From Hemiscyllium ocellatum (taxonomy: Eukaryota): DNA of 64,000 nucleotides. Each line of letters begins with the position of its first letter. Position 1 is the first letter of the stretch. The position numbers and the translations under genes are program-made. The stretch is from positions 18,062,341-18,126,340 of the forward strand of contig NC_083409.1 in the NCBI RefSeq assembly GCF_020745735.1. The letters run 5' to 3'. This document shows positions 1 through 54,799 of the stretch, in pieces. The notes beneath the pieces were generated by a model, which saw only the letters and a list, made by a program, of their open reading frames with translations, had not been told where the DNA came from and searched no databases.

Positions 1-295
1 GTGCAAGTTTGGATACAGGCTGCAGAATTTTGGATGAGCTGAAGGATACGGAGGGCAGTGGCTGTGATGTGCATCAGCCATTGGAATGGTCATGTTTGGA
101 GCCCCATAAACCTGGCTGAGATTTTCAGTGGCTGATCTTTGTGATATGAAAGATATGGGGCTTAGATGATTCTCAAACATGAGACCCAGTTTGTAAAGAG
201 TCTGGTTGAGCAGCAGATAGTGCTCAGGGGGAGGGATGGAGTTTATAACAGGATCTGAAGAGGATGGCTTTGATCTTCCCAATATGTTTCACAAT
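1..295 (-). mobile_element. Decayed L2-like LINE fragment, shared with the opposite arm of the duplication
   Basis: Reverse complement aligns to 53550-53850, whose + strand resembles the C-terminal part of an L2-type RT ORF. Confidence 0.5.
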
Positions 296-300
296 GAGCT

Positions 301-550
301 TGGCTCCTCAGTCCTGACTGCTCTTAGCTGCTGTGATTGTCACTGATCGTACACTTATTATTAGAGATTCTGACCACAGCAGAAAGCCCCAGTGTAAAAA
401 ATAACTGCAAAGACTGTCAGATCGCAAGGTTGAAACTTCACAAAAAAGAGGAAGTGAAAGAAGGAGCTCGGAGCAGCTGGGTGTTTGTTACTGAGACGGG
501 AGAAAACTGTGAACCATCTTCACTCCCTGGAATCTGACAGCACAGGAGGC
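301..550 (+). promoter_or_regulatory. Conserved upstream element of cluster A (candidate B-cell enhancer): Ets-IRF composite site plus E-box
   Basis: GGAAGTGAAA at 450-459 and CAGCTG at 474-479. About 93% identical by manual count to the reverse complement of ~53300-53550, clearly more than the adjacent shared LINE. Confidence 0.6.
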
Positions 551-869
551 TGGTTCTAGGATTTATTTTTTGCAGAAACAGCACAGTTTTGGAAAAGGTG
601 TCAGTCACTCTCTCACAAACACACACGCCTGCACTCGGAGATCAGAAACAGAATCCAGCAGCAGCTCTGTCTCCAAGCTGTGAAACCTGCACAGAATTGT
701 TCCCTCATTCAGTTTATAACTGGCAGGATAGACCAAGCAGGGGAGGCAACACAGTGGTGTGTACAGTCAGAAAGGAGTTGCCCTGGGAGTCCTCACCATT
801 AACTATGGAACCCATGAAGCCTCATGACAGCAGGTCAAACATGGGGAAGGAAACCTCCTGCTGATTACC

Positions 870-1200
870 ACATAGCACCGCCCTCCCCTCCAACCTCAAC
901 TGAGCAGTCAGTCCTCCTCCATGTTGAACAACACTTGGTGGGAGCACTGAGGGAGGGAATGATGCCGGATATACCCTGAGTAAGGGACTTCAAAGCCCAC
1001 CATCAAGAGCTGCTCAGAAGCATCACTACTGAGCAAGCTGGTCAAGTCCACCTGATTCAGATGCTCGACTGGACCTGGGACAGGGGGTGAGGCAACCAAC
1101 AAGAGGGAAAAACATACTCACTATCACCCTCACCAACCTGCCTGCTGTTGGTGTATCTGTCCATGACAGTATCAGTAAGAGTGACCGCCGCACAGTCCGT
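870..1200 (+). mobile_element. Non-LTR retrotransposon fragment (APE endonuclease region)
   Basis: Similar to repeat segments at ~51350-51700 and ~23810-23895 (ctcctccatgttgaacaacac...gcactgaggg). Confidence 0.45.
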
Positions 1201-2540
1201 GTGGAGACAAAATCCTGTCTTCCCTTTGAGATTATCTTACATTCTGTTGGGCAAGAGATATGGAATGTCAGAAAGAACTTTGATTTTAGCAGGAATTGGC
1301 AAAGTCTTGGAAATTAGTGCCCATTCAGGTGAGACAGGTGAAGACACTCAGTGATTGCAATGGCAGATTGGATGGGCTCTTGATGGAAATAAACCTGCAA
1401 GGCCCTGGGGGTCGAGTAGGGGAGGGGGTGGGACTGACTGGATTGCTCCATGAAATGACAGCATTTCCCTGACAGGCTGAATGTTCCCCCCTGTGCTGGA
1501 AATAGGTCTCACTCAATGAGGGATTCACAATTAGAGAGTTTGGATGCAGTAAATACAGGACAAATTGTTTCTCCAGGCAGGAGGGTCAGTAACCCAAGGG
1601 CACACATTTCAGAAAGAGTCGAAAGCACAAGAGAGAAGATAGGAACATTTTTTATCCAGCGAGTTCATGATGACTGTCTGCAAGGTGAGTGGAAGTGGAT
1701 TCAACAGCAACTTTGAAAAGGGCATTTGGAGAAATAGCTGAAAAGGAAATAATTGCAGGGTTATCCAGGAAGGGCTGGGGAAATGGGACTCATTGGACTC
1801 ATTTGACTAACAGTCACAATCAGCCCAGTGACCTCTGTCTGTGCTATTTTAGAGCTTACACACACTTAGACTCACCTTTACACAAAGACTGGGAGAAACA
1901 GACAACCCAGTTTACAGAAGAGTGTTTTCTCAAGGGAAACTCTCTTGAACCAACTCAAGGAACAGGCCAGACTAGATTTACTGATGAGGAAGAATTCAGC
2001 AAATCAATGGCAAGGGAACAGTGAACCAAAGTGATGGGATTGAACAGTATATTCAATAGCACAACCATTGAGAGGGGGAGGGATCAAGGGCAGGAGGTCA
2101 GAGAGCATGCTGTAGGGGTCTGAATGCTCTGCTGTCAATGGTGGGTTGGAGCAAGTAGCAATGGGCAGGAGACCAGAGACAGAAGATGAAAGGGGGAGGG
2201 AGGGAATGTGAGTCTGCAGCAGGACACAGATGGAGGGAGGGGGGAGGCCATGGAGGCAATTGGCTAGCAGTGAGGTCAGGGGTCATTCTGGAATGACAGA
2301 TGGATAAGACAGGGAAGGGCGCACTCCATATCAGACAAGTTGGAGTTTATGGAATATGGCTTTAGGAAGCTGGGACAGGACATTGGAATCATAGATTTAG
2401 GGGGCAGGACGAGCAGGAATTAGGGTTTCTGTGGTCAAGGGGCCGAGGTAACGCAGAGACAATGTTGTTGAGATTGAAATAAGAGACCTACATGATGGAG
2501 AGGATGTCGGAGTTGTAGCTCAGGTGCTGGCCAGTCCTGA

Positions 2541-2685
2541 GGGAAGGAGGACCATGTTTACTAGTCTCTTCTGGAGCATCCAATGGGAAGGAGGTCCCTG
2601 TTTATTGGTGTCTATTGGAGGTTCCAGTGGAAAGAGGTCCATGTTTACTGGTTCTATGGGAAAGTGTCCCATGTATATATCACCA
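2541..2685. repeat. ~44-bp minisatellite, first part
   Basis: About 3 degenerate copies of ggaaggaggtccatgtttactggtctctattggaggttccagt. Confidence 0.75.
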
Positions 2686-2689
2686 AAGA

Positions 2690-3910
2690 GTCATAGAGGT
2701 TTACAGCATGGGATCAGGCCGTTCAGCTCAAATCATCCATGCCGACCAAGTATCCAAAACTGAACTAGTCCCATTTGCATGTGTTTGGCCCAATTCTCTC
2801 TAATCTTTCCTATCCGTGTTCCTGTAAAAATGTCCTTGAAATGTAGTAATTGTACTCACCTCTACGAATTCTTCTGTCAGCTCATTACACATACACACTA
2901 ACCTCTGTGTGAAAATGTTGCCCCTCAGTTTCCTACTAATTCTTTCCCCTCTCAACTTAAACCTACTCCTTCTAGTACTGGACTCTCCTACCCTGGGGAA
3001 AAGACTTTGACTATTCACCTTATCTATGACCCTCCTAATTCCACAACCTCTATAAGGTCACCCCTCAATCTCCTGCATTCCCTGGAAAAACATCTTGGCC
3101 TATTCATCCTCATCTTGTAATTCAAATCCTCCAATCTTGATAACATCCCTGTTAATCTTTCTTTTATTCAAACCACTGTCATAACTTCCTTCCTATAGCA
3201 GGGTAAGCAGAAATATACTGTGTCCAAATGTGGCCTTCCCAATGCCTTGTACAGCTGTAACATGATGTCCCAGCTCCTGTACTCCCTGCTTTGACCAGTG
3301 AAGATGGTGTGCCAAATACCTTCTTCACCACCCTGTCTACCTGTGACACCACTTCCAAGGAACTATGTACCTGTACCCCTCAGTCTCTCTGTTCAACAAC
3401 ACTCCCCATGGCTCTACCATTAATTGTGTAATTTCTGCCCTGATTTGTCTTCCCAAAATGCAACTCCTTCCATTTATCAAAATTTCCATCTGGATTTGTT
3501 GATCCACTGGCCCAGTTGATCAAGATGACATTGCACTCTTGGATAACCTTCTTCCCTGTCCACTATGCCAACAATTTTAACATCAGCCACAAACTTACTG
3601 ACCATTCCTGCTATTTTCTCATCCAAATTGTTCACATAAAATATGAACAACAGTGGATCCATGATCGATTCTTGTGACAGACAGTTGGTCACTGGCCTCC
3701 AGTCTGAAGAACAACCCTCTCTCACCAGCCTCAGCCTCCTATCATCAGGCCAATTTCATATCCAATTGGTGAGCTGTCCCTGGATCCTATGTGATATAAT
3801 CTTACTGAGCAGTCTACCATAGGGAACCTTGTATTAACTCCATGTAGACAGAGTGTACTACTCTATCTTTACCTATCTTCTTGCTTCCTTCTTCAAAAAC
3901 TCAACCATCT
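2690..3910 (-). mobile_element. CR1/HER1-type LINE, 3' RT portion, decayed
   Basis: Minus-strand translations show CR1 RT motifs (DPLLFIFYVNNLD, SKFVADVKI) and the typical 3' end (FTQRLVCMCNEL). Confidence 0.8.
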
Positions 3911-3919
3911 ACTCATCTC

Positions 3920-4200
3920 CATTGGAAGTTCCAGTGATTAGGAGGCCCATATTTACTGGTCTGTCTTGGAGGATCCAGTCAGAAGGAGATCCATGGTTAC
4001 TGGTCTGTGTTGGAGGTTCCAGCAGGAAGGAGGTCCATGTTTACTGGTCTTTACTAGACGATCCAGTCCGAAAGAGGTACATGTTTACTGGTCTCCTTTG
4101 GAGAGTCCAGTCAGAAGGAGACCAATGTTTACTGGTCTCTAGTGGAGGCTCCTGCAGGAAGGAGGTCATGTTTACTGGATTCTGTAGGAGAGTCCAGTGC
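3920..4200. repeat. ~44-bp minisatellite, second part
   Basis: About 6 copies of the same unit as 2541-2685. Confidence 0.8.
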
Positions 4201-4715
4201 ATCATGGACTCCAAGGTGAGTGTGGGGTTCAGTTCCTTTCTGTTGTAACTGTATAATGGTTCAACCCGTATCCCAGTAAAACACCCTGACTCAGAGACTG
4301 ATCATGGAAAGGGAAGGAGAGGGGTAGGAGAGGGGAAGGGATTGGAAAATGTTGTGAATGGACATGCTGGATCAGGGGGTCAGATCTTGTGCTTTCCCTC
4401 CAGCTCACACTGATGGCCTGAGGATTTCCTCTCTCTGCTGGGCCTTCATGGAATGAGCTTTGTGTCCAAACCAGTCCCCAGTGAGAACAGGCCAACAGCA
4501 CAGAACTGCCCTTCATTTGACAAGAATCTAGCCATCTTTCTGAGAGAGGCCAAATCCAGGTCAATGTGGAAAATGGGGCCTTACTCCAGGAGAAAACATG
4601 CTTCTGGGGTCAAGGGCTACCATCCATGAGTGGGGCAGAGAGAGGGAGATTCATCCTGAATTCAACTGCCACAACCTGGGACACTGTGAGAAAGAGAGAG
4701 AAGTGAGTCAGAGAC

Positions 4716-5479: not shown

Positions 5480-6360
5480 GTGGATAGGTCCTGGTCACCA
5501 CATTCTGAGAAGGATGTGATTGTACTTGAGAGGGTGCAGAGATTTACCAAGATGCTGCCTGGGATGGAGGGTCAGCTGTGGATAAATCTTGGAAAGGTTG
5601 GGATTGTTTCCTTGAAGCAGTGAAGGCTGAGAGGGGACATGATAGAGGGGGATAAGATTATTTGGGGCAGTGATACCGTGGGTAAGAAGGCACTTTATAT
5701 ATCAGTAAAGGACTCAATAACCTGTGTCCCAGGTAACACAGACATGGACACATAGAAGCTCGGAACTGGAGTAGGCCTTTTGGCCCTTTGAGTCTGCTCT
5801 GTCATTCATTATGATCATGGCTGATCCTCTCTCTCAAAACCATATTCCTGCTTTCTCCCCATTCCCTTCATGCTGTTAAAATGCAAAACAATTATCTCTC
5901 TCTTTTTCTTGAATTTATTCAGTTCCTTGGGTTCCACAGTTGTCCTACCCTTTGAGTGAAGAAATGTTTCCTCATCTCAGTCCAAAATGGTCTACCCTGT
6001 ATCCCCCTGAGACTGGGTCCCCTGATTCCAGACTTCCCAACCAGGGGAAACCTCCTCTCTGCCCAGCCCTGTTAGAATTTTATACATCTCAATCAGATTC
6101 CCTCTCATCCTTCTTAACTTGAGTGAGTCCAGGCCCAGTCAAATTGGAGTGAGAGGAGAATTGAGGAGAAATGTTTTCACCCAGAGGGTGGTGGGAGTCT
6201 GGAACTCACTGCCTGAAAGGCTGGTTGAGTCACAAACTCTCGTGACATTGGAGCAGTGTTTAGATATTCCCTTGTGTTGCTGTAGCCTCCAGGGTGATGG
6301 GCCAAGAGCTGGAGAATGGGATTAGTGTCATCAGATCTTTGTTTACTCACACGGACACAA
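5480..6360. mobile_element. Nested CR1-type LINE 3' fragments in both orientations
   Basis: Motifs such as FTQRVVGVWNSLPERLVE. Partly mirrored at ~48360-49330. Confidence 0.65.
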
Positions 6361-6441
6361 TGGGCCAAATGGCCTCATTCAATGTTGTTCACATCAATGA
6401 TTCTCAGAGAGAGAGAGAGAGCGAGAGAGGGAGAGAGAGAA

Positions 6442-6538
6442 GAGGAAGTGTGAGGGGCTGACGTGGCTCTCTCTGCCTGATGCCATTTACATACTGAGGA
6501 ACACCCAGTCAGACTCTCACAGGCTGCAGCTTTATAAA
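6442..6538 (+). promoter_or_regulatory. IgL V promoter of cluster A
   Basis: GAGGAAGT (Ets/PU box) 6442-6449, TGACGT 6459-6464, octamer variant ATTTACAT 6485-6492, TATAAA 6533-6538, ATG at 6599. Confidence 0.75.
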
Positions 6539-6598
6539 GCAGAGCCCAGTGAAGGGAGAGTTTATCAGGAACCAGGCACAGGGACAGGAGCACACATC

Positions 6599-6647
6599 AT
6601 GATTTCACACATCCAGTTAATTTGGCCCCTGGCATTCTGTGTTGCAG
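6599..6647 (+). pseudogene. IGKV: Ig kappa-type leader exon, cluster A (MISHIQLIWPLAFCVA, phase-1 GT donor)
   Basis: 49-nt exon followed by GTACAAA. Paralogous to 48093-48141. Confidence 0.9.
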
Positions 6648-6833
6648 GTACAAATCTCTCTCCTTCCACCTTGAATCTTTAGCTTCTCCCCATTCCACTC
6701 CAATTCCACTGACTTGTGATTGAAGGGAAAATGCTGAAACCAGAAGAATGCTCTGTGTCTCCAACAATCTCTCATTTGACAGGCTCTTTCTGTGACAGTT
6801 CTGACTTCACTGTGTTTCTCTCTGACCCCTCAG

Positions 6834-7129
6834 TTATCAGTGGGGACATCATCATGTCCGAGTCTCCCCGGGTGCTGTTAATGGGACTGGGCCAGACTGC
6901 AACCACCACCTGGATGACCAGTCAAAGCATTAGCAGCTACCTTGCTTGGTACCAGCAGTGAGAAGTTCAGAAACCCTCTCTCCTTATCTATGATGGAACA
7001 AATCGATTCACAGGAGTCTCCGATCGATTCACCGGCAGTGGATCAGGGACCAGTTTCACCCTGACAATCAGCAACGTTCAGAATGAAGATGTCGCTGAAT
7101 ATTATTGTCAGCAGTATAGCAGCAGACTT
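6834..7129 (+). pseudogene. IGKV: Ig kappa-type V segment, pseudogene
   Basis: DIIMSESP...[14 protein letters not shown]...[34 protein letters not shown]. First cysteine replaced by TGG (6911-6913) and in-frame TGA at 6959-6961 (CGA in cluster B). Confidence 0.95.
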
Positions 7130-7157
7130 TACAGTGATACAGTGCCATACAAAAACC
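7130..7157 (+). other. 12-bp-spacer RSS with a non-canonical heptamer
   Basis: TACAGTG (7130-7136) + atacagtgccat (12 nt) + ACAAAAACC (7149-7157). Confidence 0.95.
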
Positions 7158-7601
7158 TCAACACGCACAACACCACCTTCTGTACTGACACATCCAACAG
7201 TTATATGAAATGTATAATAATGGACAAACAGTCCCATCTCCTGCACTGACACATCCATAGTTATATATAAAGTAAATTGAGCAAATTACCCCATGCTGGG
7301 TTTGTCACTGTCCACTACACACTCCAGTCCCTGTGGTGTCCACCGCTCACTGAAGGCCTCAAGTTTCCCTCTTACACTCCATGGCCACATGTGAAGAACA
7401 CCTGCAAAATTTAACAATGAAAACTCAATTTCACAAACCCCCGAGAGTAGCTGGACACAACCCCGGAAGACAGAGAGAGAAAGACACATGAATGAGGGAG
7501 AGACAGAGAGGGGTAGGGAGTGAATGAGATTGACCAAGAATAGACAGAGACAGAGAGAGACAGGGAGAGGTTGAGAGTGACAGGGGGAAGCAGAGAGCAG
7601 A

Positions 7602-7640: not shown

Positions 7641-7675
7641 GTACACGTTTGGTAAAGGAACCAAACTCAGACTGA
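7641..7675 (+). pseudogene. IGKJ: J segment of cluster A ([11 protein letters not shown]) with GC splice donor
   Basis: FGxG motif. The donor position fixed by the paralog (ctga|GTAAGT) reads ctga|GCAAGT here. Confidence 0.92.
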
Positions 7676-8110
7676 GCAAGTAAACCTCAATTGTCTATTA
7701 TTAAACCTGTCAATACTGAAACACACTTTCTAAAACACAAATGCTGAATTGTTGAAGGTGTTAGTGGGGAGCTGCAGTGAATGAAATGGTTGATTGAGTA
7801 GCACTGTGTCGAACAGGGTGTCCAGCTGTATTTCTTTCGTTCCATTGCCCCGCTTAAGCAGCAAGACAGAAGTCAGTAAGTTTTACTCACTGTGTGGAGG
7901 AGCTCTGTCCATTTGCAGCCTGTGGTCCCATTCCTGCAGCATGGAGTGAAATCAGTGAGCAGCCTCCTGCCAGTCTCAGTGTGACAGACACAGGCAGATT
8001 TTGATGTGAGCTCTGGCTCCCTGTCCCAGTCTCTGATCTCACTGACCTCATCATCAGCAGCAGCAGCAGCAGCAGCAGCACAGTGAGACACCGAGCTCCC
8101 ACCTCCCCAG
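7676..8110 (+). promoter_or_regulatory. Conserved J-C intronic block, candidate intronic enhancer
   Basis: Highly similar to ~47140-47582 reversed. CAGCTG 7823-7828, TGTGGT 7921-7926, (CAG)8 8055-8078. Confidence 0.45.
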
Positions 8111-8139
8111 CTTTAACTCTGCTCAATCACACAATCACA

Positions 8140-10200
8140 GAATTGTTACAGTGCACAAGGTGGCCATTCCACCCATCCTGTCTGGACCGGCTCTCTGAAT
8201 GAGCAATTGACTGAGTGTCATTCTCCTGCCTTCTCCCTGTCCCCCTGCACATTGTTCCTTTTCAAATAACAGCCTCATCCCTTCGGAATGTTTTAATTGA
8301 AGCTGCCTCCACCACACTCTCAGGCAGTGCATTCCACACCTTAACCACCCACTGGCTGAAAATGTTGCTCCCCATTTCAATTTTGTTCCTTTTCCCAATT
8401 ACTTTCAATCTGTGGTCTCTTGGTCTGAATCCTTTCTTAATTGGGAACATTTTCTCCCTATTTACTCTGTCCAGGCCCTTCCTGATTTTGAATTCCTTGA
8501 ACAAATCTCCTCTCAGCCTTCTCCAAAGAAGACAGTCCCAAATTCTCCAATCAAACTTCATAACTGATGTTCCTCATCCCTGGAATTATCTTTGAGAACA
8601 ATTTTTGCCATCGCTACAAAACATTCGCCTCCTTCCAGAATTCTTCACATTATCTATGTCCCTCATGATTTTCCAAACCTCTACAAGGTCACTCCTCAGA
8701 ACCTTCCACTTCAGGGTAAGAAGTCTCAGCTTTTCCAGCCGCTCATAGTCATGGAGTCATACAGCGTGGAAACAGACCTTTCAGTCCAACTTGTCCATGC
8801 TAACCAAATATCCTAAACTGACCTCATCCCATTTGCCAGCATTTGGCTTACACCTCTCAAAACCCAACCTATTCATGTACCCATACCAATGTGTTTTAAA
8901 TGCTGTAACTGTATCTGCCTCCAACACTTTCTCTGGCAGCTCAATCCATGACACGCACCACCCTCTGTGTGACAAGTTACCCCTCAGGTCCCTTTTGAAT
9001 CTTTTGCCTCTCACCTTAAAATTATGTCCTCTTGTTCTGGAATCCCTTTCCCACGGAAAAGACCTTGAATATACACCCAGTCCATGCCCGTCATGGTTTT
9101 ATAAACATCTATAACGTCACCCCGAGGCCTTAGATGCTGCAGGGAATATAGCCCCAGTTTCTTCAGCCTTTCCCTGTCGCTCGAACCCTCCAAATCCTGG
9201 CCACATCCTTGTAAGTCTTTTCTGCAGCTTTTTAAGTTTAACAACATCCTTCCTATCTCAGGATAATAGGATTGTTCACATCATTCCCAAAGTGGCCTCA
9301 CCAATCTCCTGTACTGCTGCAACATGATGGTCCAACTCCTGGACTCAATGCAGTGATGAACAAAAGCAAGCAAACCAAACACCTTCTTCATCACCCTGTC
9401 TACCTGTGACCCACTTTCAAGGAATAATGTACCTGCATCTTCACCCCTAGGCCTGTTATTCAGCAACACTCCACAGGGCCCTCCCATTAACTGTATAACT
9501 CCTGCCCTGGTTTGCCTTTCCAAAATGCAACATCTCACATTTATCTAAACTGAACTCCATTTGCCACTCTTCTGCCCATTGCCCCATCTGATCAAGGTCC
9601 TGCTGTACCCTGAGATAATCTTCTTCACTATCCACTGTCCCACCAATTTTGGTGTCATTTACAAACTTACCATAACTCCTATATTCCCATCCAAATCATT
9701 TCTTTAAATGAGGAAAAGCATTTGTGAACTCAGTACCAATCCTTGCGGCACACAACTATTCACAGATCTCCAGTCTGAAAAGCAACCTTTTACCACCACT
9801 CTCTGTCTCCTATCTTCAAGCCAATTTTTTGACTCCAATGGCTCACTCCCCCTGGATCCCATGTGGTCTAGCCTTACTAACCAGTCTATCATGTGGAACC
9901 TTGTCATGTGAAGCCCATATTGACAATGTCTTACTGTTCTGTCTTCATCAATACTTTTTGTCACCTCCTGAATCAAATTCAGGAGACGTGAGTTCCCATG
10001 CACAAAGCCACACTGATTATCCAAACGATGTAAATCCTGTCCCACAGAATCCACTCCAACATCTTACCCAGCACTGACATCAGGCTCACTGGTCTATCGT
10101 TCCCTTGCTTTTCCTTACAGCCTTTCTGAAATAAGGGCATAATCTTAGCCAATCTCTCTGTTTTTCCAGCACCTTATCCATGGTTGCCGATGATACATAT
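8140..10200 (-). mobile_element. Stacked CR1/HER1 LINE fragments, shared with cluster B intron
   Basis: Translations include FSQWVVKVWNALPE, RRLVRPLW and RQRVVVKGCFSDWRSV. Mirror copies at ~44400-47130. Confidence 0.8.
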
Positions 10201-14504: not shown

Positions 14505-14832
14505 GCCGTGAGAACTCTCAGCCCAAGCTGACCCTGCTGCCCCCTCCCCGGAGCAGGTCAATGCCAAGGGCACTGCCACCCTGGTGTGTCTTGCCAATCA
14601 CTTCTATCCCGATGAGCTGGAGGTGCAGTGGAAGAAGGATGGTGCAGTCATTTCGGACGGGGTTCAGACCAGCAACTACCTGCGAGCTTTGGACAGCACC
14701 TACAGTGTCAGCAGCATGCTGACCCTCTCTGGGTCTGACTGGGAGTCTGACGCTCGCTTCTCCTGTGCCCTCACCCACGTGACCCTCCCCTCTCCCCTCA
14801 TCAAGAGCATCAGGAGATCAGAATGCATGTAG
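14505..14832 (+). pseudogene. IGKC: Ig kappa-type C exon of cluster A, frameshifted
   Basis: Acceptor tttcag|gc. The exon is 328 nt versus 329 nt for the paralog, with a 1-nt deletion in the C-run at ~14540-14550. The downstream frame gives VCLANHFYPDELEVQWKKDG...FSCALTH...SECM*. Confidence 0.9.
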
Positions 14833-15358
14833 TGTGTTCAAGACAGTCCACAGAGGAGGCACAACTTTAAATAGAACAGGGCTGAGCTGGCAGGACAAAG
14901 GTCATTGTCAGAACTGAATTTCAACTCTCTTCCTTCTCAGGACCAGCTCAGAGACATTTCTGAGGATCAGGGGTTAAGGCAGGTCATTGGGACACTGTAG
15001 ATAGAGCTTTACGCTGTGTCAAACCCCATGCTGTCCCTGTTCTGGGAGTGTTTGGCGGGGGCAGAGTTGACTTGTGATGCCAAGTAAAATCTCTTGAAGT
15101 TGCTAAAGACTGTCAGCTGTACAAAACAATGTGAACCTCAGAAGTCTCTGTTTCAGTAAACCAGATCTCCTTCCTGCTCGGCCGTCAGTTCCAATTTAAG
15201 GTTTTGTCACTGTTTAAAGGGACAGGATTCTCGTGCTATTGAGAAAACCTCCACAAGTGTTTTCCTCAAGCTCCATTGTGGCTGTGAATTTGTGCAGCTT
15301 CCTCTGTCTGGGCTGTTAATTGCAGTCTGTTTTCTGTCAATGTCAATCTGGAAAGGGG

Positions 15359-15364
15359 AATAAA
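15359..15364 (+). terminator. Polyadenylation signal of cluster A
   Basis: AATAAA followed by a GT-rich tract, at the same position in all three C copies. Confidence 0.75.
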
Positions 15365-15569
15365 GATGAAGAAGATTCAGTCTCTGTCTCTGTGTGTGCT
15401 TTGGAAATTGACCAGTCCATTCAGCTGATTGGCTACATTTCAGCATGGCATTGTCACAATTGGCTCATTGGCCTGTCAATCAATGACACATCCGTTGTAG
15501 AGGATACTGACAGCCAATCATCAATCACTTTCAAATGATCCCTTTGATCTGGAATCATTTGAGGTTACA

Positions 15570-19720: not shown

Positions 19721-21454
19721 GAACATTTTAGACAAGACACCTTGTTGCCAGATCCTTACTGCAACTTGATTCAGTTCATTCAGAAAGAGAAAAAGGACAA
19801 TGTGCAGATTGTTGAACAGGCCCCTACACCTGGGCCTGAGGGAGGGGCCCAAGCTCCAACACACTGGCCTCACTTCACACCAACCTTCACACAGTGCGGG
19901 GTCATGAACTCCGACCATCAATCCCTCTGGGACCGGGACGGAGTGAGGGAACAGGGACAATTGTAGAAGAGTCAATAAGGAGTAAAGCAAGATGGAGAGA
20001 GTGTGTTGGAAAGGGGTTAGAGAAGGAAATATACTTTGTCCCTCTCAATACTGATATTGTCTACGTGTATCACAGAATGAACAAAACAGCACACTGTGAA
20101 GATAATCATATCACAGGAGACATTTTCATTGGGCTGTGATAAGTATCCTAGTACAAAAGCTGTTTTTCCTCCCTCCCCCTGAAGAGGAGAGAGGCATGGG
20201 AAAAGAGAACTGACAATTCAAAATAAAAGCTCTTCACATATTGCCATCATTTAATATATTAATGTGAGAGGATTAGAGACCCTTACCAGCGAGAGTGTGG
20301 TGGCTCAGAGGATAAAAGGCAGACAGCAAAGAGCAGCATTATTCCTTCTCAGGGTGTTAATGTCATTGGCAAGCCTCATATTTATTGCCCATCTCCAGCA
20401 GTTCAGACTGAGTTCTTTGCTGAGCTAGATCATGGGGCCGTGAAGAATGAGTCATATCACTGTGGGACTGGAGTCACAGTCTGGGTGATGACTGGATTCC
20501 CTTGCCTAAAGAACATACATAAAATGACATTGAGTTTCATGGTTTTTACTTGGACACATGCCAGCGCCGTCCTTCCCAGATATTAAATTGCTCACCACCG
20601 CCCTCTCCAGGACAATTAGGGAAGGGCAACCAATAGCAGACACATCAACGCTTGCCCCATCCCAGGAGAAATCAAAATAAATGAGGGACAATTCAAATAA
20701 TAACCTGGGGGAGGCTTGAATTAATCTCTTTGAAAGACTGGAGCTTGCTTTTTTCAGATTACAAGGTGGAGTGCCCCAACGACTGGCACTGGGATCAGGC
20801 ACAATATGAATTGCAAAGGTCTAACAAACGGGTACAAAGACAATATCACTAAACTGCAAAAAAAGATAATCAGGAAGAACGCAAGAGATGACAGAAAGCC
20901 ATTAGTGGGTGTAAGACTGTAATGCAGATGTTGTTGAATACACCAGAAATACAATTAAAGCGATTGGGATAGAGCAGGGCAATGGGATTAACTGAGTTTC
21001 TCTACTGAGAGTTGGCAAGAAGCTTTCCTGCTTGTAATGACTCAGAACAATAAATGCTGAAGTGCAGCTCATATTGTAAACAATGTACTGCAGCGGGTAA
21101 GAAAGGATGGCCAGTGACATAAATGCTTAAAATTGGGAAAATTTTCAGAATAAGACATGGGAAAGGCCAATGGGATTTTGGAATGAATATTGAGAGTGAG
21201 GAGATGGAGGGGAGAGTGGCCAGGACAGCTGTACTGAAGAATGGTTAGGTCACATCTGGGATATGGTGGACAGTTAGGGGCTTCTATGAGGTGCAATGCA
21301 GAATGGGACAGGGATAGGGGATCTAGGTTACAAGGAAACACCAGAACAGGATCTCGAGGAGGGAGGGAGGGAATTCTGATATTCAAAATTCCTTAATGAA
21401 ATCAACACAGTAAATGTAGATTTTCTGTCAATGATGGCAAACTGAAAGGCAAAA

Positions 21455-23972: not shown

Positions 23973-24770
23973 AGTCCAACGCTCGCTTCTCCTGTGCCCT
24001 CACCCACGTGACGCTCCCCTCCCCACTCAGCAAGAGCATCAGGAGATCAGAATGTGTGTAGAGTGTTGGAGACAGTCCACAGAGGAGACACAACTTTAAA
24101 TAGAACAGGGCTGAGCTGGCAGGACAAAGGTCATTGTCAGCACTGAATTTCAACTCTCTTCCTTCTTGAGACTGGCCTCTGGGAGACTCTGAGGTTCAGG
24201 GGTTAAGGCAGGTTATCGTGACACTATAGAGAGAGATTCACTCTGTTCCCAACCAGTGCTGTCCCTGTCCTGGGAGTGTTTGACGAGGTCAGTGTGGAGA
24301 CAGCTTTATTCTGTTTCTTATCGTGTCCCTGTCCTGGGTGTCTTTGGTGGGAACAGTACGGAAAGAGCTTTACTCTGTATCTGACCCTATTCTGTCCCTG
24401 TCCAGGAGACTGTTTGTTGGGGACAGTGTTGAGTTGTAATAACAAGCATAACCTTTCAAAGATATTGAAAACTGTGAGCTGTATAAAAACAATGTGAACC
24501 TCAGAAGTCTCTGCTTCAGTAAACCAGATCTCCTTCCTGCTCAGCCACCAGTTCCAGTTTAAGGTTTAGTCACTGTTTAAAGGGACAGGATTCTCAGGTT
24601 ATTGAGAAAATCTCCACAAGTGTTTTCCTCAAGCTCCATTGTGGCTGTGAATTTGTGCAGCTTCCTCTGTCTGGGCTGATAATTGCAGTCTGTTTTCTGT
24701 CAATGTCAATCTGGAAAAGTGAATAAAGATGAAGAAGATTCAGTCTCTGTCTCGTGTGTGCTTTGGAAAT
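23973..24770 (+). pseudogene. IGKC: Orphan 3' fragment of an Ig kappa C exon (23973-24061) plus full 3' UTR
   Basis: Encodes SNARFSCALTHVTLPSPLSKSIRRSECV*. The 3' UTR aligns to those of both other C exons, with AATAAA at 24722-24727. Confidence 0.92.
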
Positions 24771-53299: not shown

Positions 53300-53550
53300 T
53301 TGCCTCCTCCTGTGTTGTCAGATTCCAGGGAGTGCAGACAGTTTACAGTTTTCTCCCGTCTCAGTAACAAACACCCAGCTGCTCCGAGCTCCTTCTTTCA
53401 CTTCCTCTCTTGGTGAAGTTTCAACCTTACGATCTGACAGTCTTTGCGTTTATTATTAACATTGGGGCTTTCTACTGTGGTCAGAATCTCTAATAATAAG
53501 TGTCCAATCAGTGACAATCACAGCAGCTAAGAGCAGTCAGGACTGAGGAG
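53300..53550 (-). promoter_or_regulatory. Conserved upstream element of cluster B with Ets-IRF composite site
   Basis: TTTCACTTCC at 53396-53405 (reverse of GGAAGTGAAA) and CAGCTG at 53376-53381. Paralog of 301-550. Confidence 0.6.
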
Positions 53551-53559
53551 CCAGGCTCA

Positions 53560-54240
53560 CTGGGAAACACATTGGCAGAATCAAAGCCATCCTCTTCAGC
53601 TCCTGATACAAGCTCCATCCCTCTCCCTGAGTACTATCTGCTGCTCAACCAGACTCTTCACAACTTTGGCCTCATCTTTGGGGCTGATTTGAGGCCCAAA
53701 TCCTACACATCACAATTATCAGCCACTGAAAATCTCAACCATGTTTTTGTGACCATTCCAATGTTGTCCAGGCCCACATCACAGCCACTGGCTTCCTTAA
53801 ACATCAGCTCATCCCAAACTCTGCTGTCTGTGTTCAAACTCACACCAAGTCCACCCCATACCCCTGCCCACGCATCCCCACCCCACCATGACCATCACAA
53901 TCCTCACTGACTGACATAAGCTCCTGGTCCAGCAACACCTCGATTTTCAAATTCTCGTCCTTGTTCTCAATCTGCTCCCTGTTCTTCCACCCTCCCGATC
54001 TCTGTGACCTCCTCCAAGCTGCCTCACTCAGTGTGATCAATAATCTTGGATATATGGCCCTCTGTTTCTTCATCCAAGTCATTGAGAAATATCGTGAAAA
54101 GCTGAGGTCCCAGCACAGATCCCTGGGAATACCACTACTCACATCTGGCTCATTGGAACACATGCACATTATCCTTCCTCTCTGTCTCCTAGACAGACCC
54201 ATTCCTGACCCAAGGCAAATGCATTTCTCAAATTCCATCC
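53560..54240 (+). mobile_element. Decayed L2-like LINE fragment(s)
   Basis: LNQTLHNFGLIFGADLRP resembles the L2 RT C-terminal LGVIFD motif. Confidence 0.5.
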
Positions 54241-54799
54241 AATTCCATGATTTGGAGATGCCGGTGTTGGACTGTCGTGTAAATGTTAAAAATCACAGAA
54301 CACCAGCTTCTAATGCAACAGGTTTGTTTGGAAGCATTAGCGTTTGGAGCGCTGGTCCTTCATCAGATGGTTGTGGAGTGTAAGATCTGAATCAATGTTT
54401 CTTTTGTGGAACATTCTTAAATGTCTTTTGGAATTCCCTATTGACAATAGCCATCGACATTCCCTTATATCCCACATTAGTGAGCTCCTAGCAAAGTGTA
54501 ACCCGGTTAGTTAAAGATGTCTGAACCTTTGTCAATCCATGCTGATTCTCTCGGACCAGTTCATATTTGTCCGTTATTCTGTCTCTAAAAACAGACTCAA
54601 TCACTTCCTGACAACAGACATTCAATGGAGATGTTCATTGTCATTGAGGCTTGTAAACAGCTAGCATTGACACGAGGAGCTGAACAGCCTCCTCCTGTGC
54701 TGGCACCTTCTCTGTCTCCTGGACGGAAATATTTTACAGATTAAAAACTAAAGACCAGCAGCAAATTTTAAAATATAAATTAAAATCTCCTCAAATAAT

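What the first reader, a model, noticed from the sequence alone, without database searches (positions are those of the whole stretch)
301..550. Constrained upstream element with a perfect Ets-IRF composite site (EICE) 5-6 kb 5' of both V promoters
Seen: this ~250-bp block is ~93% identical (manual count) to ~53300-53550 reversed. It includes a 64-bp perfectly identical core with retained CpGs, whereas the directly adjacent shared L2 fragment is visibly more diverged (roughly 75-80%). The core contains AGAGGAAGTGAAAG followed by CAGCTG. Known: GGAAnnGAAA is the PU.1/Spi-B plus IRF4/8 site of the mammalian kappa 3' and lambda enhancers, where it works with E2A E-boxes. Inference: each shark IgL minicluster may carry its own upstream EICE enhancer. 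I am not aware of this element being described.
Basis: partly seen in the sequence, partly recalled or inferred. Interest (0 to 1): 0.7.

Follow-up and report, generated by a model that had tools for sequence, protein, structure and literature searches.

The report
Conserved upstream module of shark kappa clusters
A 250-350 base non-coding block a few kilobases upstream of each shark kappa light-chain mini-gene is kept as well as the promoter and exons in three shark species and carries a PU.1/IRF-type site next to an E-box, so it is a credible but untested candidate for each cluster's own enhancer.

Summary
Window 301-549 matches 53553-53306 (minus strand) at 93.2%, with a 64-bp perfect run at 447-510. 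The flank 6-300 is 77.7% identical.

The window is a ~22-kb inverted duplication of two kappa V-J-C clusters. Arm A is a split pseudogene and arm B is a germline-joined VJ. On its own, 93% is not exceptional: 11% of 250-bp windows between the arms reach it.

The block recurs in the same orientation 2.3-6.3 kb upstream of the V promoter in 5 of 6 kappa clusters I could inspect. These come from this genome, Chiloscyllium punctatum and Stegostoma tigrinum. In every comparison it diverges at the rate of the promoter/leader and C exon, while the spacers decay.

- GGAAGTGAAA is kept in 5 of 6 copies.
- CAGCTG is kept in 6 of 6 copies, always 14 bp downstream.
- A RUNX-like GACCACA is kept in 5 of 6 copies.

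Three caveats apply. The EICE pattern occurs at chance frequency in the window. The core CpGs decay in diverged copies. The best-conserved 10-mers are not the EICE.

Read depth shows many copies. This fits one per cluster but could not be calibrated. Enhancer activity is inferred, not shown.

The scan has already flagged this same module at several other kappa loci of this genome. No paper describing it was found.

The parts
195..549 (+).
   Evidence: 93.2% to arm B over 301-549. Homology to C. punctatum L002 (92.9%) and S. tigrinum L006 (86.2%) spans 195/196-544/549.
53306..53660 (-). The same module in arm B
   Evidence: It is followed by a different 3' junction ('type 2'), shared with L001a, L006 and, after an insertion, L002.
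450..459 (+). Ets-IRF composite motif GGAAGTGAAA (arm B copy at 53396-53405, minus strand)
   Evidence: Kept in 5 of 6 copies. The same 10-mer occurs in the lambda-B probe of PMC4872103.
474..479 (+). E-box CAGCTG (arm B copy at 53376-53381)
   Evidence: Kept in 6 of 6 copies, and 14 bp after the EICE in all 5 copies that have one.
372..378 (+). RUNX-like GACCACA inside the well-kept stretch TAGAGATTCTGACCACAG (arm B copy at 53476-53482)
   Evidence: Kept in 5 of 6 copies. The 10-mer at 364-373 shows 1 deviation across 6 sequences.
483..497 (+). GTTTGTTACTGAGAC, the best-conserved sub-element; forkhead-like, factor unknown (arm B copy at 53358-53372)
   Evidence: The 10-mer at 485-494 shows 1 deviation across 6 sequences.
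6525..6654 (+). TATA-like box and leader exon of the arm A V gene, the presumed target promoter. This V is a pseudogene: TGA at 6959-6961, Cys23 lost, heptamer TACAGTG.
48086..48215 (-). TATA-like box and leader exon of the arm B germline-joined VJ gene (VJ ORF 47575-48024)

Best explanation
The block is a cis-regulatory module that belongs to each kappa light-chain minilocus. It is about 250-350 bp of non-coding DNA, 2-6 kb upstream of the V promoter and in a fixed orientation. It was duplicated together with the cluster and has been held under purifying selection. The most likely mode of action is a B-lineage enhancer. An Ets factor (PU.1/Spi-B) and IRF4/8 would bind GGAAGTGAAA. An E-protein would bind CAGCTG 14 bp away. 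RUNX-type and forkhead-type factors would bind two further invariant stretches. The assembled complex would loop to the V promoter to drive transcription, and probably also RAG accessibility and/or hypermutation, for that cluster alone. Shown: position, copy-per-cluster pattern, conservation and motif retention. Inferred: every step involving protein binding and activity.
For: The block is found in the same orientation upstream of V in arm A, arm B, C. punctatum L001 and L002, and S. tigrinum L006, at 2,293-6,312 bp. A further inverted copy belongs to a neighbouring cluster in L001.

Identity to arm A, in the order arm B / L002 / L006 / L001:
- block: 93.2 / 94.3 / 88.7 / 81.9
- promoter-leader: 94.4 / 92.4 / 91.2 / 83.2
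- C exon: 93.8 / - / 83.5 / 84.5
- spacer 4320-4595: 86.0 / 88.4 / none / 74.4

In the S. tigrinum upstream 9.9 kb, only the block and the promoter still align to arm A over a long collinear stretch. Pairwise identities of the block track those of the promoter-leader and the intron island (r = 0.93 for each), so it co-evolves with its cluster. The two most diverged copies, L001a and L001b, are 68.5% identical in the block against 53.5% in the flank. The EICE is kept in 5 of 6 copies, the E-box in 6 of 6, and the spacing is fixed at 14 bp. Block against other noncoding parts, arm A to L002: 14/244 differences against about 120/693, my rounded tally from the identities (Fisher p = 2e-6). The block's 31-mers are held by DNA runs of four organism labels at shares of 0.40-0.60, at least as high as the shares for the C exon.
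Against: There are no functional data of any kind. The EICE pattern is at chance frequency in the window (5 against 3.9), and with six copies its retention is not statistically distinguishable from that of the rest of the block. The most conserved 10-mers are not the EICE. In the orthologous-like comparison of arm A with L005, 4.6% of 250-bp windows reach 94%, including LINE-derived DNA, so the excess conservation is moderate: roughly half the neutral rate by my estimate. Arm A is a pseudogene, yet by my count from alignment A2 its block has about as many private changes as arm B's (about 9 each). L005, the closest relative of arm A, shows no block in its assembled upstream sequence, although that sequence has N gaps and a TE at the junction. 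Known mammalian light-chain enhancers lie in the J-C intron or 3' of C, not 5' of V.
Confidence: 0.5

Rival explanations
1. The block is constrained and cluster-linked but is not a classical enhancer. It could be an upstream promoter of a sterile or germline transcript, a boundary or anchor element between densely packed miniloci, a silencer, or a hypermutation-targeting element.
For: The conservation evidence fits any cis function. The most invariant stretches (364-373 and 485-494) are not the EICE or the E-box. The orientation relative to V is constant in all five clusters. A run guessed to be RNA (X15) holds contigs over 113-423 and 447-546.
Against: The X15 signal scales with copy number, as it does for the neighbouring LINE fragment, and the run may contain DNA. 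Two runs guessed to be RNA from the same sample as X1 hold next to none of the block's words. I saw no CTCF-like core or TATA/Inr by eye. Constant orientation follows trivially from whole-unit duplication.
Confidence: 0.2
2. The block has no function. Its high identity would come from concerted evolution (gene-conversion patches within a large multigene array), or from a locally low mutation rate.
For: The arm-to-arm alignment is a mosaic running from 73% to 97.6%, and 11% of windows reach 93%. Arm A and arm B are more alike (93%) than either is to the same-junction-type copy in C. punctatum. The core CpGs decay in diverged copies. The pseudogene arm keeps the block as well as the intact arm does.
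Against: Conversion cannot act between species. Yet the block is the top or near-top conserved segment against C. punctatum and S. tigrinum copies, and it is the only upstream spacer piece still alignable over a long collinear stretch in S. tigrinum. The same boundaries (about 195 to 549) recur in independent comparisons. The islands coincide with exons and the promoter, which is the pattern selection produces.
Confidence: 0.15
3. The block is a member of a dispersed interspersed repeat family, such as a SINE or the tail of a LINE. On this view it merely happened to sit in the ancestral cluster, and most of its copies are unrelated to Ig genes.
For: Summed contig depth over 255-508 is 20-100 times that over 1271-2667. 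It equals the depth of the adjacent LINE fragment in three DNA runs. The edges are sharp near 195-255 and 549. A LINE RT fragment lies upstream of the arm B copy.
Against: Depth could not be calibrated. It is compatible with one copy per cluster in an array of about 60 genes (nurse shark, PMC5192425) to about 200 genes (scan note s1-228448, untested). Few distinct contigs carry the depth (9-29 per site against at least 64 for the LINE). Rfam finds no tRNA, 7SL or 5S head. The RT homology stops about 180 bp before the shared region begins, with no coding continuity. Identity between copies follows cluster relatedness (r = 0.93), which would not be expected for independent insertions. There is no extra copy in the 64-kb window or in about 120 kb of fetched loci beyond the cluster-linked ones.
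Confidence: 0.1

Closest known systems
Mouse Ig lambda enhancers (lambda-B site of E-lambda 2-4 / 3-1) and the Ig kappa 3' enhancer core
   Same: Located in a light-chain locus. The Ets-IRF composite has exactly the 10-mer GGAAGTGAAA of the lambda-B probe (PMC4872103; the same core is used for IRF4/PU.1 binding work). An E-box lies close by. That PU.1 plus IRF4 cooperate with E2A at these enhancers is my own knowledge of the literature and was not re-read here.
   Different: It lies 2-6 kb 5' of V instead of in the J-C intron or 3' of C. There is one copy per V-J-C minilocus rather than one or two per translocon locus. No sequence homology beyond the motifs was shown, and no activity or binding data exist. 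An earlier scan note says the EICE-to-E-box spacing equals that of a mammalian kappa enhancer. I did not verify that.
Conserved non-coding elements of multigene families, found by phylogenetic footprinting
   Same: Conserved above flanking spacers in paralogues and across species. It carries a 1-bp and an 8-bp indel, so it is not coding. It co-diverges with the gene it accompanies.
   Different: It is embedded in a rapidly duplicating Ig minilocus array where gene conversion can mimic constraint. The conservation excess is moderate, at about half the neutral rate by my estimate.
Hypermutation-targeting elements (DIVAC) that overlap Ig enhancers in chicken and mammals
   Same: The motif set is similar: E-box plus Ets-IRF composite. 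This rests on my own knowledge and was not checked here. Shark light chains are known to hypermutate.
   Different: No MEF2-type site was noted, the position differs, and nothing was tested.

Membership tests
Ets-IRF composite element (EICE) | 5'-GGAA-NN-GAAA-3' with a 2-bp spacer | tested here: met
   450-459 (+) and 53396-53405 (-)
Ets-IRF composite element (EICE) | Both half-sites kept in related copies | tested here: met
   Kept in 5 of 6 copies; L001b reads GGAAATGAAG. With six copies this is not significantly better than the block average.
Ets-IRF composite element (EICE) | Occurrence above chance | tested here: not met
   5 matches in the window against 3.91 expected; 36 of 100 shuffles reach 5
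Ets-IRF composite element (EICE) | Cooperative binding of PU.1/Spi-B with IRF4/8 | not testable with these tools
   Needs EMSA or ChIP with shark proteins
Ig light-chain enhancer (kappa 3' / lambda type) | Lies within an Ig light-chain locus | tested here: met
   Upstream of kappa V-J-C clusters
Ig light-chain enhancer (kappa 3' / lambda type) | Position in the J-C intron or 3' of C | tested here: not met
   2.3-6.3 kb 5' of the V promoter
Ig light-chain enhancer (kappa 3' / lambda type) | EICE adjacent to an E-protein E-box | tested here: met
   CAGCTG lies 14 bp 3' of the EICE in 5 of 5 copies
Ig light-chain enhancer (kappa 3' / lambda type) | B-cell-specific, orientation-independent activation of a promoter | not testable with these tools
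   Needs reporter assays or chromatin profiling
Constrained non-coding element | More conserved than flanking spacer, in paralogues and across species | tested here: met
   Against the orthologous-like background it sits at about the 95th percentile.
Constrained non-coding element | Co-divergence with the linked gene | tested here: met
   r = 0.93 with the promoter-leader and with the intron island over 10 pairs
Dispersed repeat (SINE / LINE tail) | Many copies in the genome | tested here: inconclusive
   High summed contig depth. Single-copy depth is unknown, and the signal is compatible with one copy per kappa cluster.
Dispersed repeat (SINE / LINE tail) | Pol III head or coding continuity with a LINE | tested here: not met
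   Rfam gives only sub-threshold miRNA hits. RT homology ends near 54020.
Dispersed repeat (SINE / LINE tail) | Copies at sites unrelated to Ig genes | not testable with these tools
   No tool here searches the shark genome by DNA

The most novel reading that the evidence does not exclude
Each of the many shark kappa miniloci carries its own upstream enhancer. That enhancer is built on the same PU.1/IRF4-E2A (plus RUNX) logic as mammalian light-chain enhancers. On this reading the regulatory grammar of light-chain genes predates the split of cartilaginous and bony vertebrates. Stochastic activation of one module among dozens to hundreds could then underlie light-chain exclusion, and perhaps hypermutation targeting, in the cluster organisation.
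Probability: 0.35. Interest if true: 0.8.

Novelty: new variant of a known kind. Interest (0 to 1): 0.58.

Why it matters
No transcriptional enhancer of a cartilaginous-fish Ig gene turned up in the literature I could search. The 2016 review 'Fish Immunoglobulins' does not use the word enhancer and says promoters appear only at V segments. How dozens to hundreds of autonomous Ig miniloci are switched on one at a time is an open question. Malecek et al. 2008 propose that a promoter-enhancer holocomplex forms only rarely (PMC2435157). A defined 250-350-bp candidate with mutable sites makes that question testable by ATAC/ChIP and reporter assays. It would also date the Ets-IRF plus E-box design of light-chain enhancers to the base of jawed vertebrates.

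Tried and rejected
- **RSS-like reading of the core:** GGTGTTTGT ... ACTGTG has a spacer of 16-17 bp, not 12 or 23, so I rejected it by eye.
- **Structured RNA:** Rfam gives only sub-threshold miRNA matches (18 bits against a gathering score of 80).
- **LINE 3' end:** an RT fragment lies upstream of the arm B copy, but its homology ends near 54020 with no reading-frame continuity into the shared region.
- **SINE:** I found no A/B-box arrangement by eye and no tRNA-like hit.
- **Copy number from reads:** summed Logan contig depth is high over 255-508, but single-copy depth could be anywhere from about 3 to about 100, giving estimates from tens to thousands. I use it only as 'multi-copy'.
- **Transcription:** X15 (RNA by guess only) covers the block at a depth proportional to its copy number, and it also holds C-exon words. 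This is inconclusive.
- **Other species:** look-ups for Cetorhinus, Hemiscyllium, the new C. punctatum assembly and S. torazame returned no DNA because the files were too large. L003 and L004 have too little upstream sequence.
- **CpG retention as evidence of constraint:** rejected. CTCGG becomes CTCAG, and GACGG becomes GATGA, GATAG or GACAG in diverged copies.
- **Search of the scan's notes by sequence:** blank.

Full report
**1. Observation.** Window 6-549 aligns with 53840-53306 on the minus strand. Within it, 301-549 is 232/249 = 93.2% identical. It contains perfect runs of 47, 29 and 64 bp, the last at 447-510. The flank 6-300 is 77.7% identical. The core holds GGAAGTGAAA (450-459) and CAGCTG (474-479), plus two CpGs, all identical in both copies. 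Homology stops abruptly at 549/53306.

**2. Context.** A self-comparison shows one large inverted duplication: about 6-22170 on the plus strand against about 53840-27450 on the minus strand. Overall identity is 83%.

Each arm is a kappa-type light-chain cluster.
- Arm A has a leader at about 6600 and a V exon ending at about 7120. The V RSS has a mutated heptamer (TACAGTG), followed by 12 bp and then ACAAAAACC.
- Arm A's J lies at about 7640 behind a 23-bp RSS, and its C exon at about 14530-14850.
- Arm A's V is a pseudogene, with TGA at 6959-6961 and Cys23 lost.
- Arm B carries an intact germline-joined VJ (ORF 47575-48024, minus strand).

The arms are tail to tail, so both blocks face outward and lie upstream of their V genes. 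The distance to the TATA/leader is 5,976 bp in arm A (including the 128-N gap, which I left untouched) and 5,091 bp in arm B. The closest proteins are kappa chains of Chiloscyllium punctatum, Cetorhinus, Hemiscyllium and nurse shark.

**3. Is 93% more than background?** Not by itself. The arm-to-arm alignment is a mosaic running from 73% to 97.6%, and 11% of 250-bp windows reach 93%. Islands that equal or beat the block are listed below.
- 19790-20039 (97.6%)
- the C exon, 14583-14832 (96%)
- 15075-15324
- the J-C intron, 7861-8357 (93-96%)
- the promoter/leader, 6156-6723 (93-95%)

The 64-bp run is the fourth longest. The pair in this window alone cannot separate selection from gene-conversion patches.

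**4. Other copies.** Protein look-ups gave DNA for four further kappa loci: C. punctatum L001, L002 and L005 (GCA_003427335.1) and Stegostoma tigrinum L006.

The block is present in the same orientation as V in three of them.
- L001 5063-5296, 4,631 bp before the TATA/leader
- L002 3373-3615, 6,312 bp before
- L006 7398-7634, 2,293 bp before

L001 holds a second, inverted copy at 1242-991. That copy is collinear with window 22-1509 and evidently belongs to a head-to-head neighbour cluster.

Neither the window nor the roughly 120 kb of fetched loci has any further copy.

L005 is the exception. It is the closest relative of arm A, at 86% over 11 kb, and is itself a V pseudogene disabled by different mutations. 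It shows no block in its assembled upstream sequence. That region has an 884-N gap and a TE exactly at the point where homology to arm A begins, at 661. Absence there is therefore not proven.

Two old junction types follow the block. Arm A and L001b share one. Arm B, L001a, L006 and (after an insertion) L002 share the other. The two-type arrangement therefore predates the species splits.

**5. Conservation.** Identity to arm A, in the order arm B / L002 / L006 / L001:

| Segment | arm B | L002 | L006 | L001 |
|---|---|---|---|---|
| block 301-549 | 93.2 | 94.3 | 88.7 | 81.9 |
| core 447-510 | 100 | 96.9 | 92.2 | 85.9 |
| promoter/leader | 94.4 | 92.4 | 91.2 | 83.2 |
| J-C intron island | 94.4 | 92.5 | 87.6 | 77.8 |
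| C exon | 93.8 | - | 83.5 | 84.5 |
| V exon | 87.5 | 83.3 | 77.4 | 78.0 |
| spacer 4320-4595 | 86.0 | 88.4 | none | 74.4 |

In sliding windows the block ranks as follows.
- second against L002
- first against L006
- third in L002 against L001
- sixth against L001, behind the C exon and its 3' region, the V exon and the intron island

In the 9.9 kb upstream of the S. tigrinum gene, only the block and the promoter-proximal region still align to arm A over a long collinear stretch. The two most diverged copies (L001a and L001b) are 68.5% identical in the block, 80% in the core and 53.5% in the flank. Over ten cluster pairs, block identity tracks promoter/leader identity and intron-island identity (r = 0.93 for each). 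The block was therefore inherited with the cluster and evolves at the rate of the cluster's functional parts. It was not inserted independently.

The excess is real but moderate. In the orthologous-like comparison of arm A with L005, the median 250-bp window is 87.6% identical, and 4.6% of windows reach 94%, including LINE-derived DNA. By my count from alignment A2, arm A, arm B and L002 each carry about nine private changes in the block. That is about 3.7% per branch, against roughly 6.7% expected neutrally. The pseudogene arm is not faster than the intact one.

**6. Motifs.** In a six-copy alignment:
- GGAAGTGAAA is intact in five copies; L001b has GGAAATGAAG.
- CAGCTG is intact in all six copies.
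- The spacing between them is 14 bp wherever both exist.
- GACCACA (RUNX-like) is intact in five copies.

The least variable 10-mers are GAGATTCTGA (364-373) and TTGTTACTGA (485-494), not the EICE. GGAANNGAAA occurs five times in the window against 3.9 expected, so the motif draws weight only from its conservation and context. The same 10-mer is the core of the mouse lambda-B PU.1 site (PMC4872103), and the same core is used for IRF4/PU.1 binding work. They decay to CpA or TpG in S. tigrinum and in L001.

**7. Copy number and expression.** The block's 31-mers are held by DNA runs of four organism labels at shares of 0.40-0.60. Those shares are at least as high as the shares for the C exon.

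I laid contigs of four runs on window 1-3800.
- Summed depth over 255-508 is 20-100 times that over 1271-2667, and equals that of the neighbouring LINE fragment.
- That depth is carried by few distinct contigs (9-29 per site, against at least 64 for the LINE).
- Nearly all copies read T and G at 348 and 350, as in arm B.
- Organisms C and D read A at 481, as do the three C. punctatum copies (the aligner splits this spot for L001a).

The element is therefore multi-copy and homogeneous within species. I could not calibrate single-copy depth. The data fit one copy per cluster in an array of about 60 genes (nurse shark, PMC5192425) to about 200 genes (scan note s1-228448, untested by me). They do not exclude additional non-Ig copies. 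The one possible RNA holder (X15) covers the block at a depth proportional to copy number, so transcription is undecided.

**8. Rivals.**
- A structured RNA, an RSS and a SINE head were not supported.
- LINE continuity was not supported.
- Pure gene conversion cannot explain the cross-species pattern.
- A dispersed repeat is unlikely given the co-divergence, but it needs a whole-genome count.
- A different cis function (upstream promoter, boundary, hypermutation targeting) remains open.

**9. Literature and earlier notes.** Full-text searches found no description of an enhancer in a shark Ig cluster. The 2016 review lacks the word. Malecek et al. 2008 invoke an unidentified promoter-enhancer holocomplex. 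Within this scan, the same module has been flagged and followed up on several other windows of this genome. My independent tests agree with those notes.

**10. Verdict.** I am about 85% confident that this is a constrained, cluster-linked non-coding module. I am about 50% confident that it acts as a B-lineage enhancer through the Ets-IRF and E-box sites. It is a new positional and organisational variant of a known kind of element, and it is untested.

Noticed in passing
window 47575-48024 (-) and 6590-7160 (+): Arm B carries an intact germline-joined VJ exon. Arm A is the split form and is a pseudogene: TGA at 6959-6961, Cys23 codon lost, V heptamer TACAGTG. L005, its closest C. punctatum relative, is a pseudogene disabled by different mutations (a 22-bp deletion and 1-bp insertions).
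   Followed up: partly
window 7861-8360 (arm B about 47400-46900): A second non-coding island lies 0.2-0.7 kb 3' of J in the J-C intron. It is as conserved as the upstream block (94.4% between arms, 92.5% to L002, 87.6% to L006). It has RUNX-like sites but no EICE or CAGCTG, and sits where the mammalian intronic kappa enhancer would be.
   Followed up: partly
window 19780-20039 (arm B about 30450-30180): This is the most conserved island of the whole duplication (97.6%, with perfect runs of 62, 67 and 47 bp). It lies about 5 kb 3' of the C exon and has one CAGGTG/CACCTG-type E-box at 19827. It was not found in L001. It is probably the '3' element' of scan note s1-213641.
   Followed up: no
window 6431-6840: The promoter, leader exon and leader intron are more conserved than the V coding exon. 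Identity is 94-96% between arms and to L005, with a 116-bp perfect run at 6463-6578. The leader intron is almost invariant across four copies.
   Followed up: partly
window 23973-24770: A third, orphan partial copy of the C-exon 3' part and its downstream region (86-88% to 14744-15408) sits at the centre of the inverted duplication.
   Followed up: no
window 550-1509 vs L001 990-29 (-): The sequence 3' of the block in arm A, including a LINE endonuclease-like fragment at 730-1270, is collinear with the inverted C. punctatum copy. It is therefore ancestral and not a recent insertion. Arm B, L001a, L006 and L002 share a different 3' junction beginning AGGCAATTCAGCCC.
   Followed up: partly
L005 1-8327: This C. 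punctatum kappa cluster has no detectable upstream module in its assembled sequence. A TE lies at 7655-8319, exactly at the break of homology, and N gaps lie at 1-84 and 3286-4169.
   Followed up: partly
window 54020-54420 (-): A truncated LINE reverse-transcriptase fragment (motifs around ...GSVLGPQLFTIFLNDLDE...) lies just outside the shared region of arm B.
   Followed up: partly
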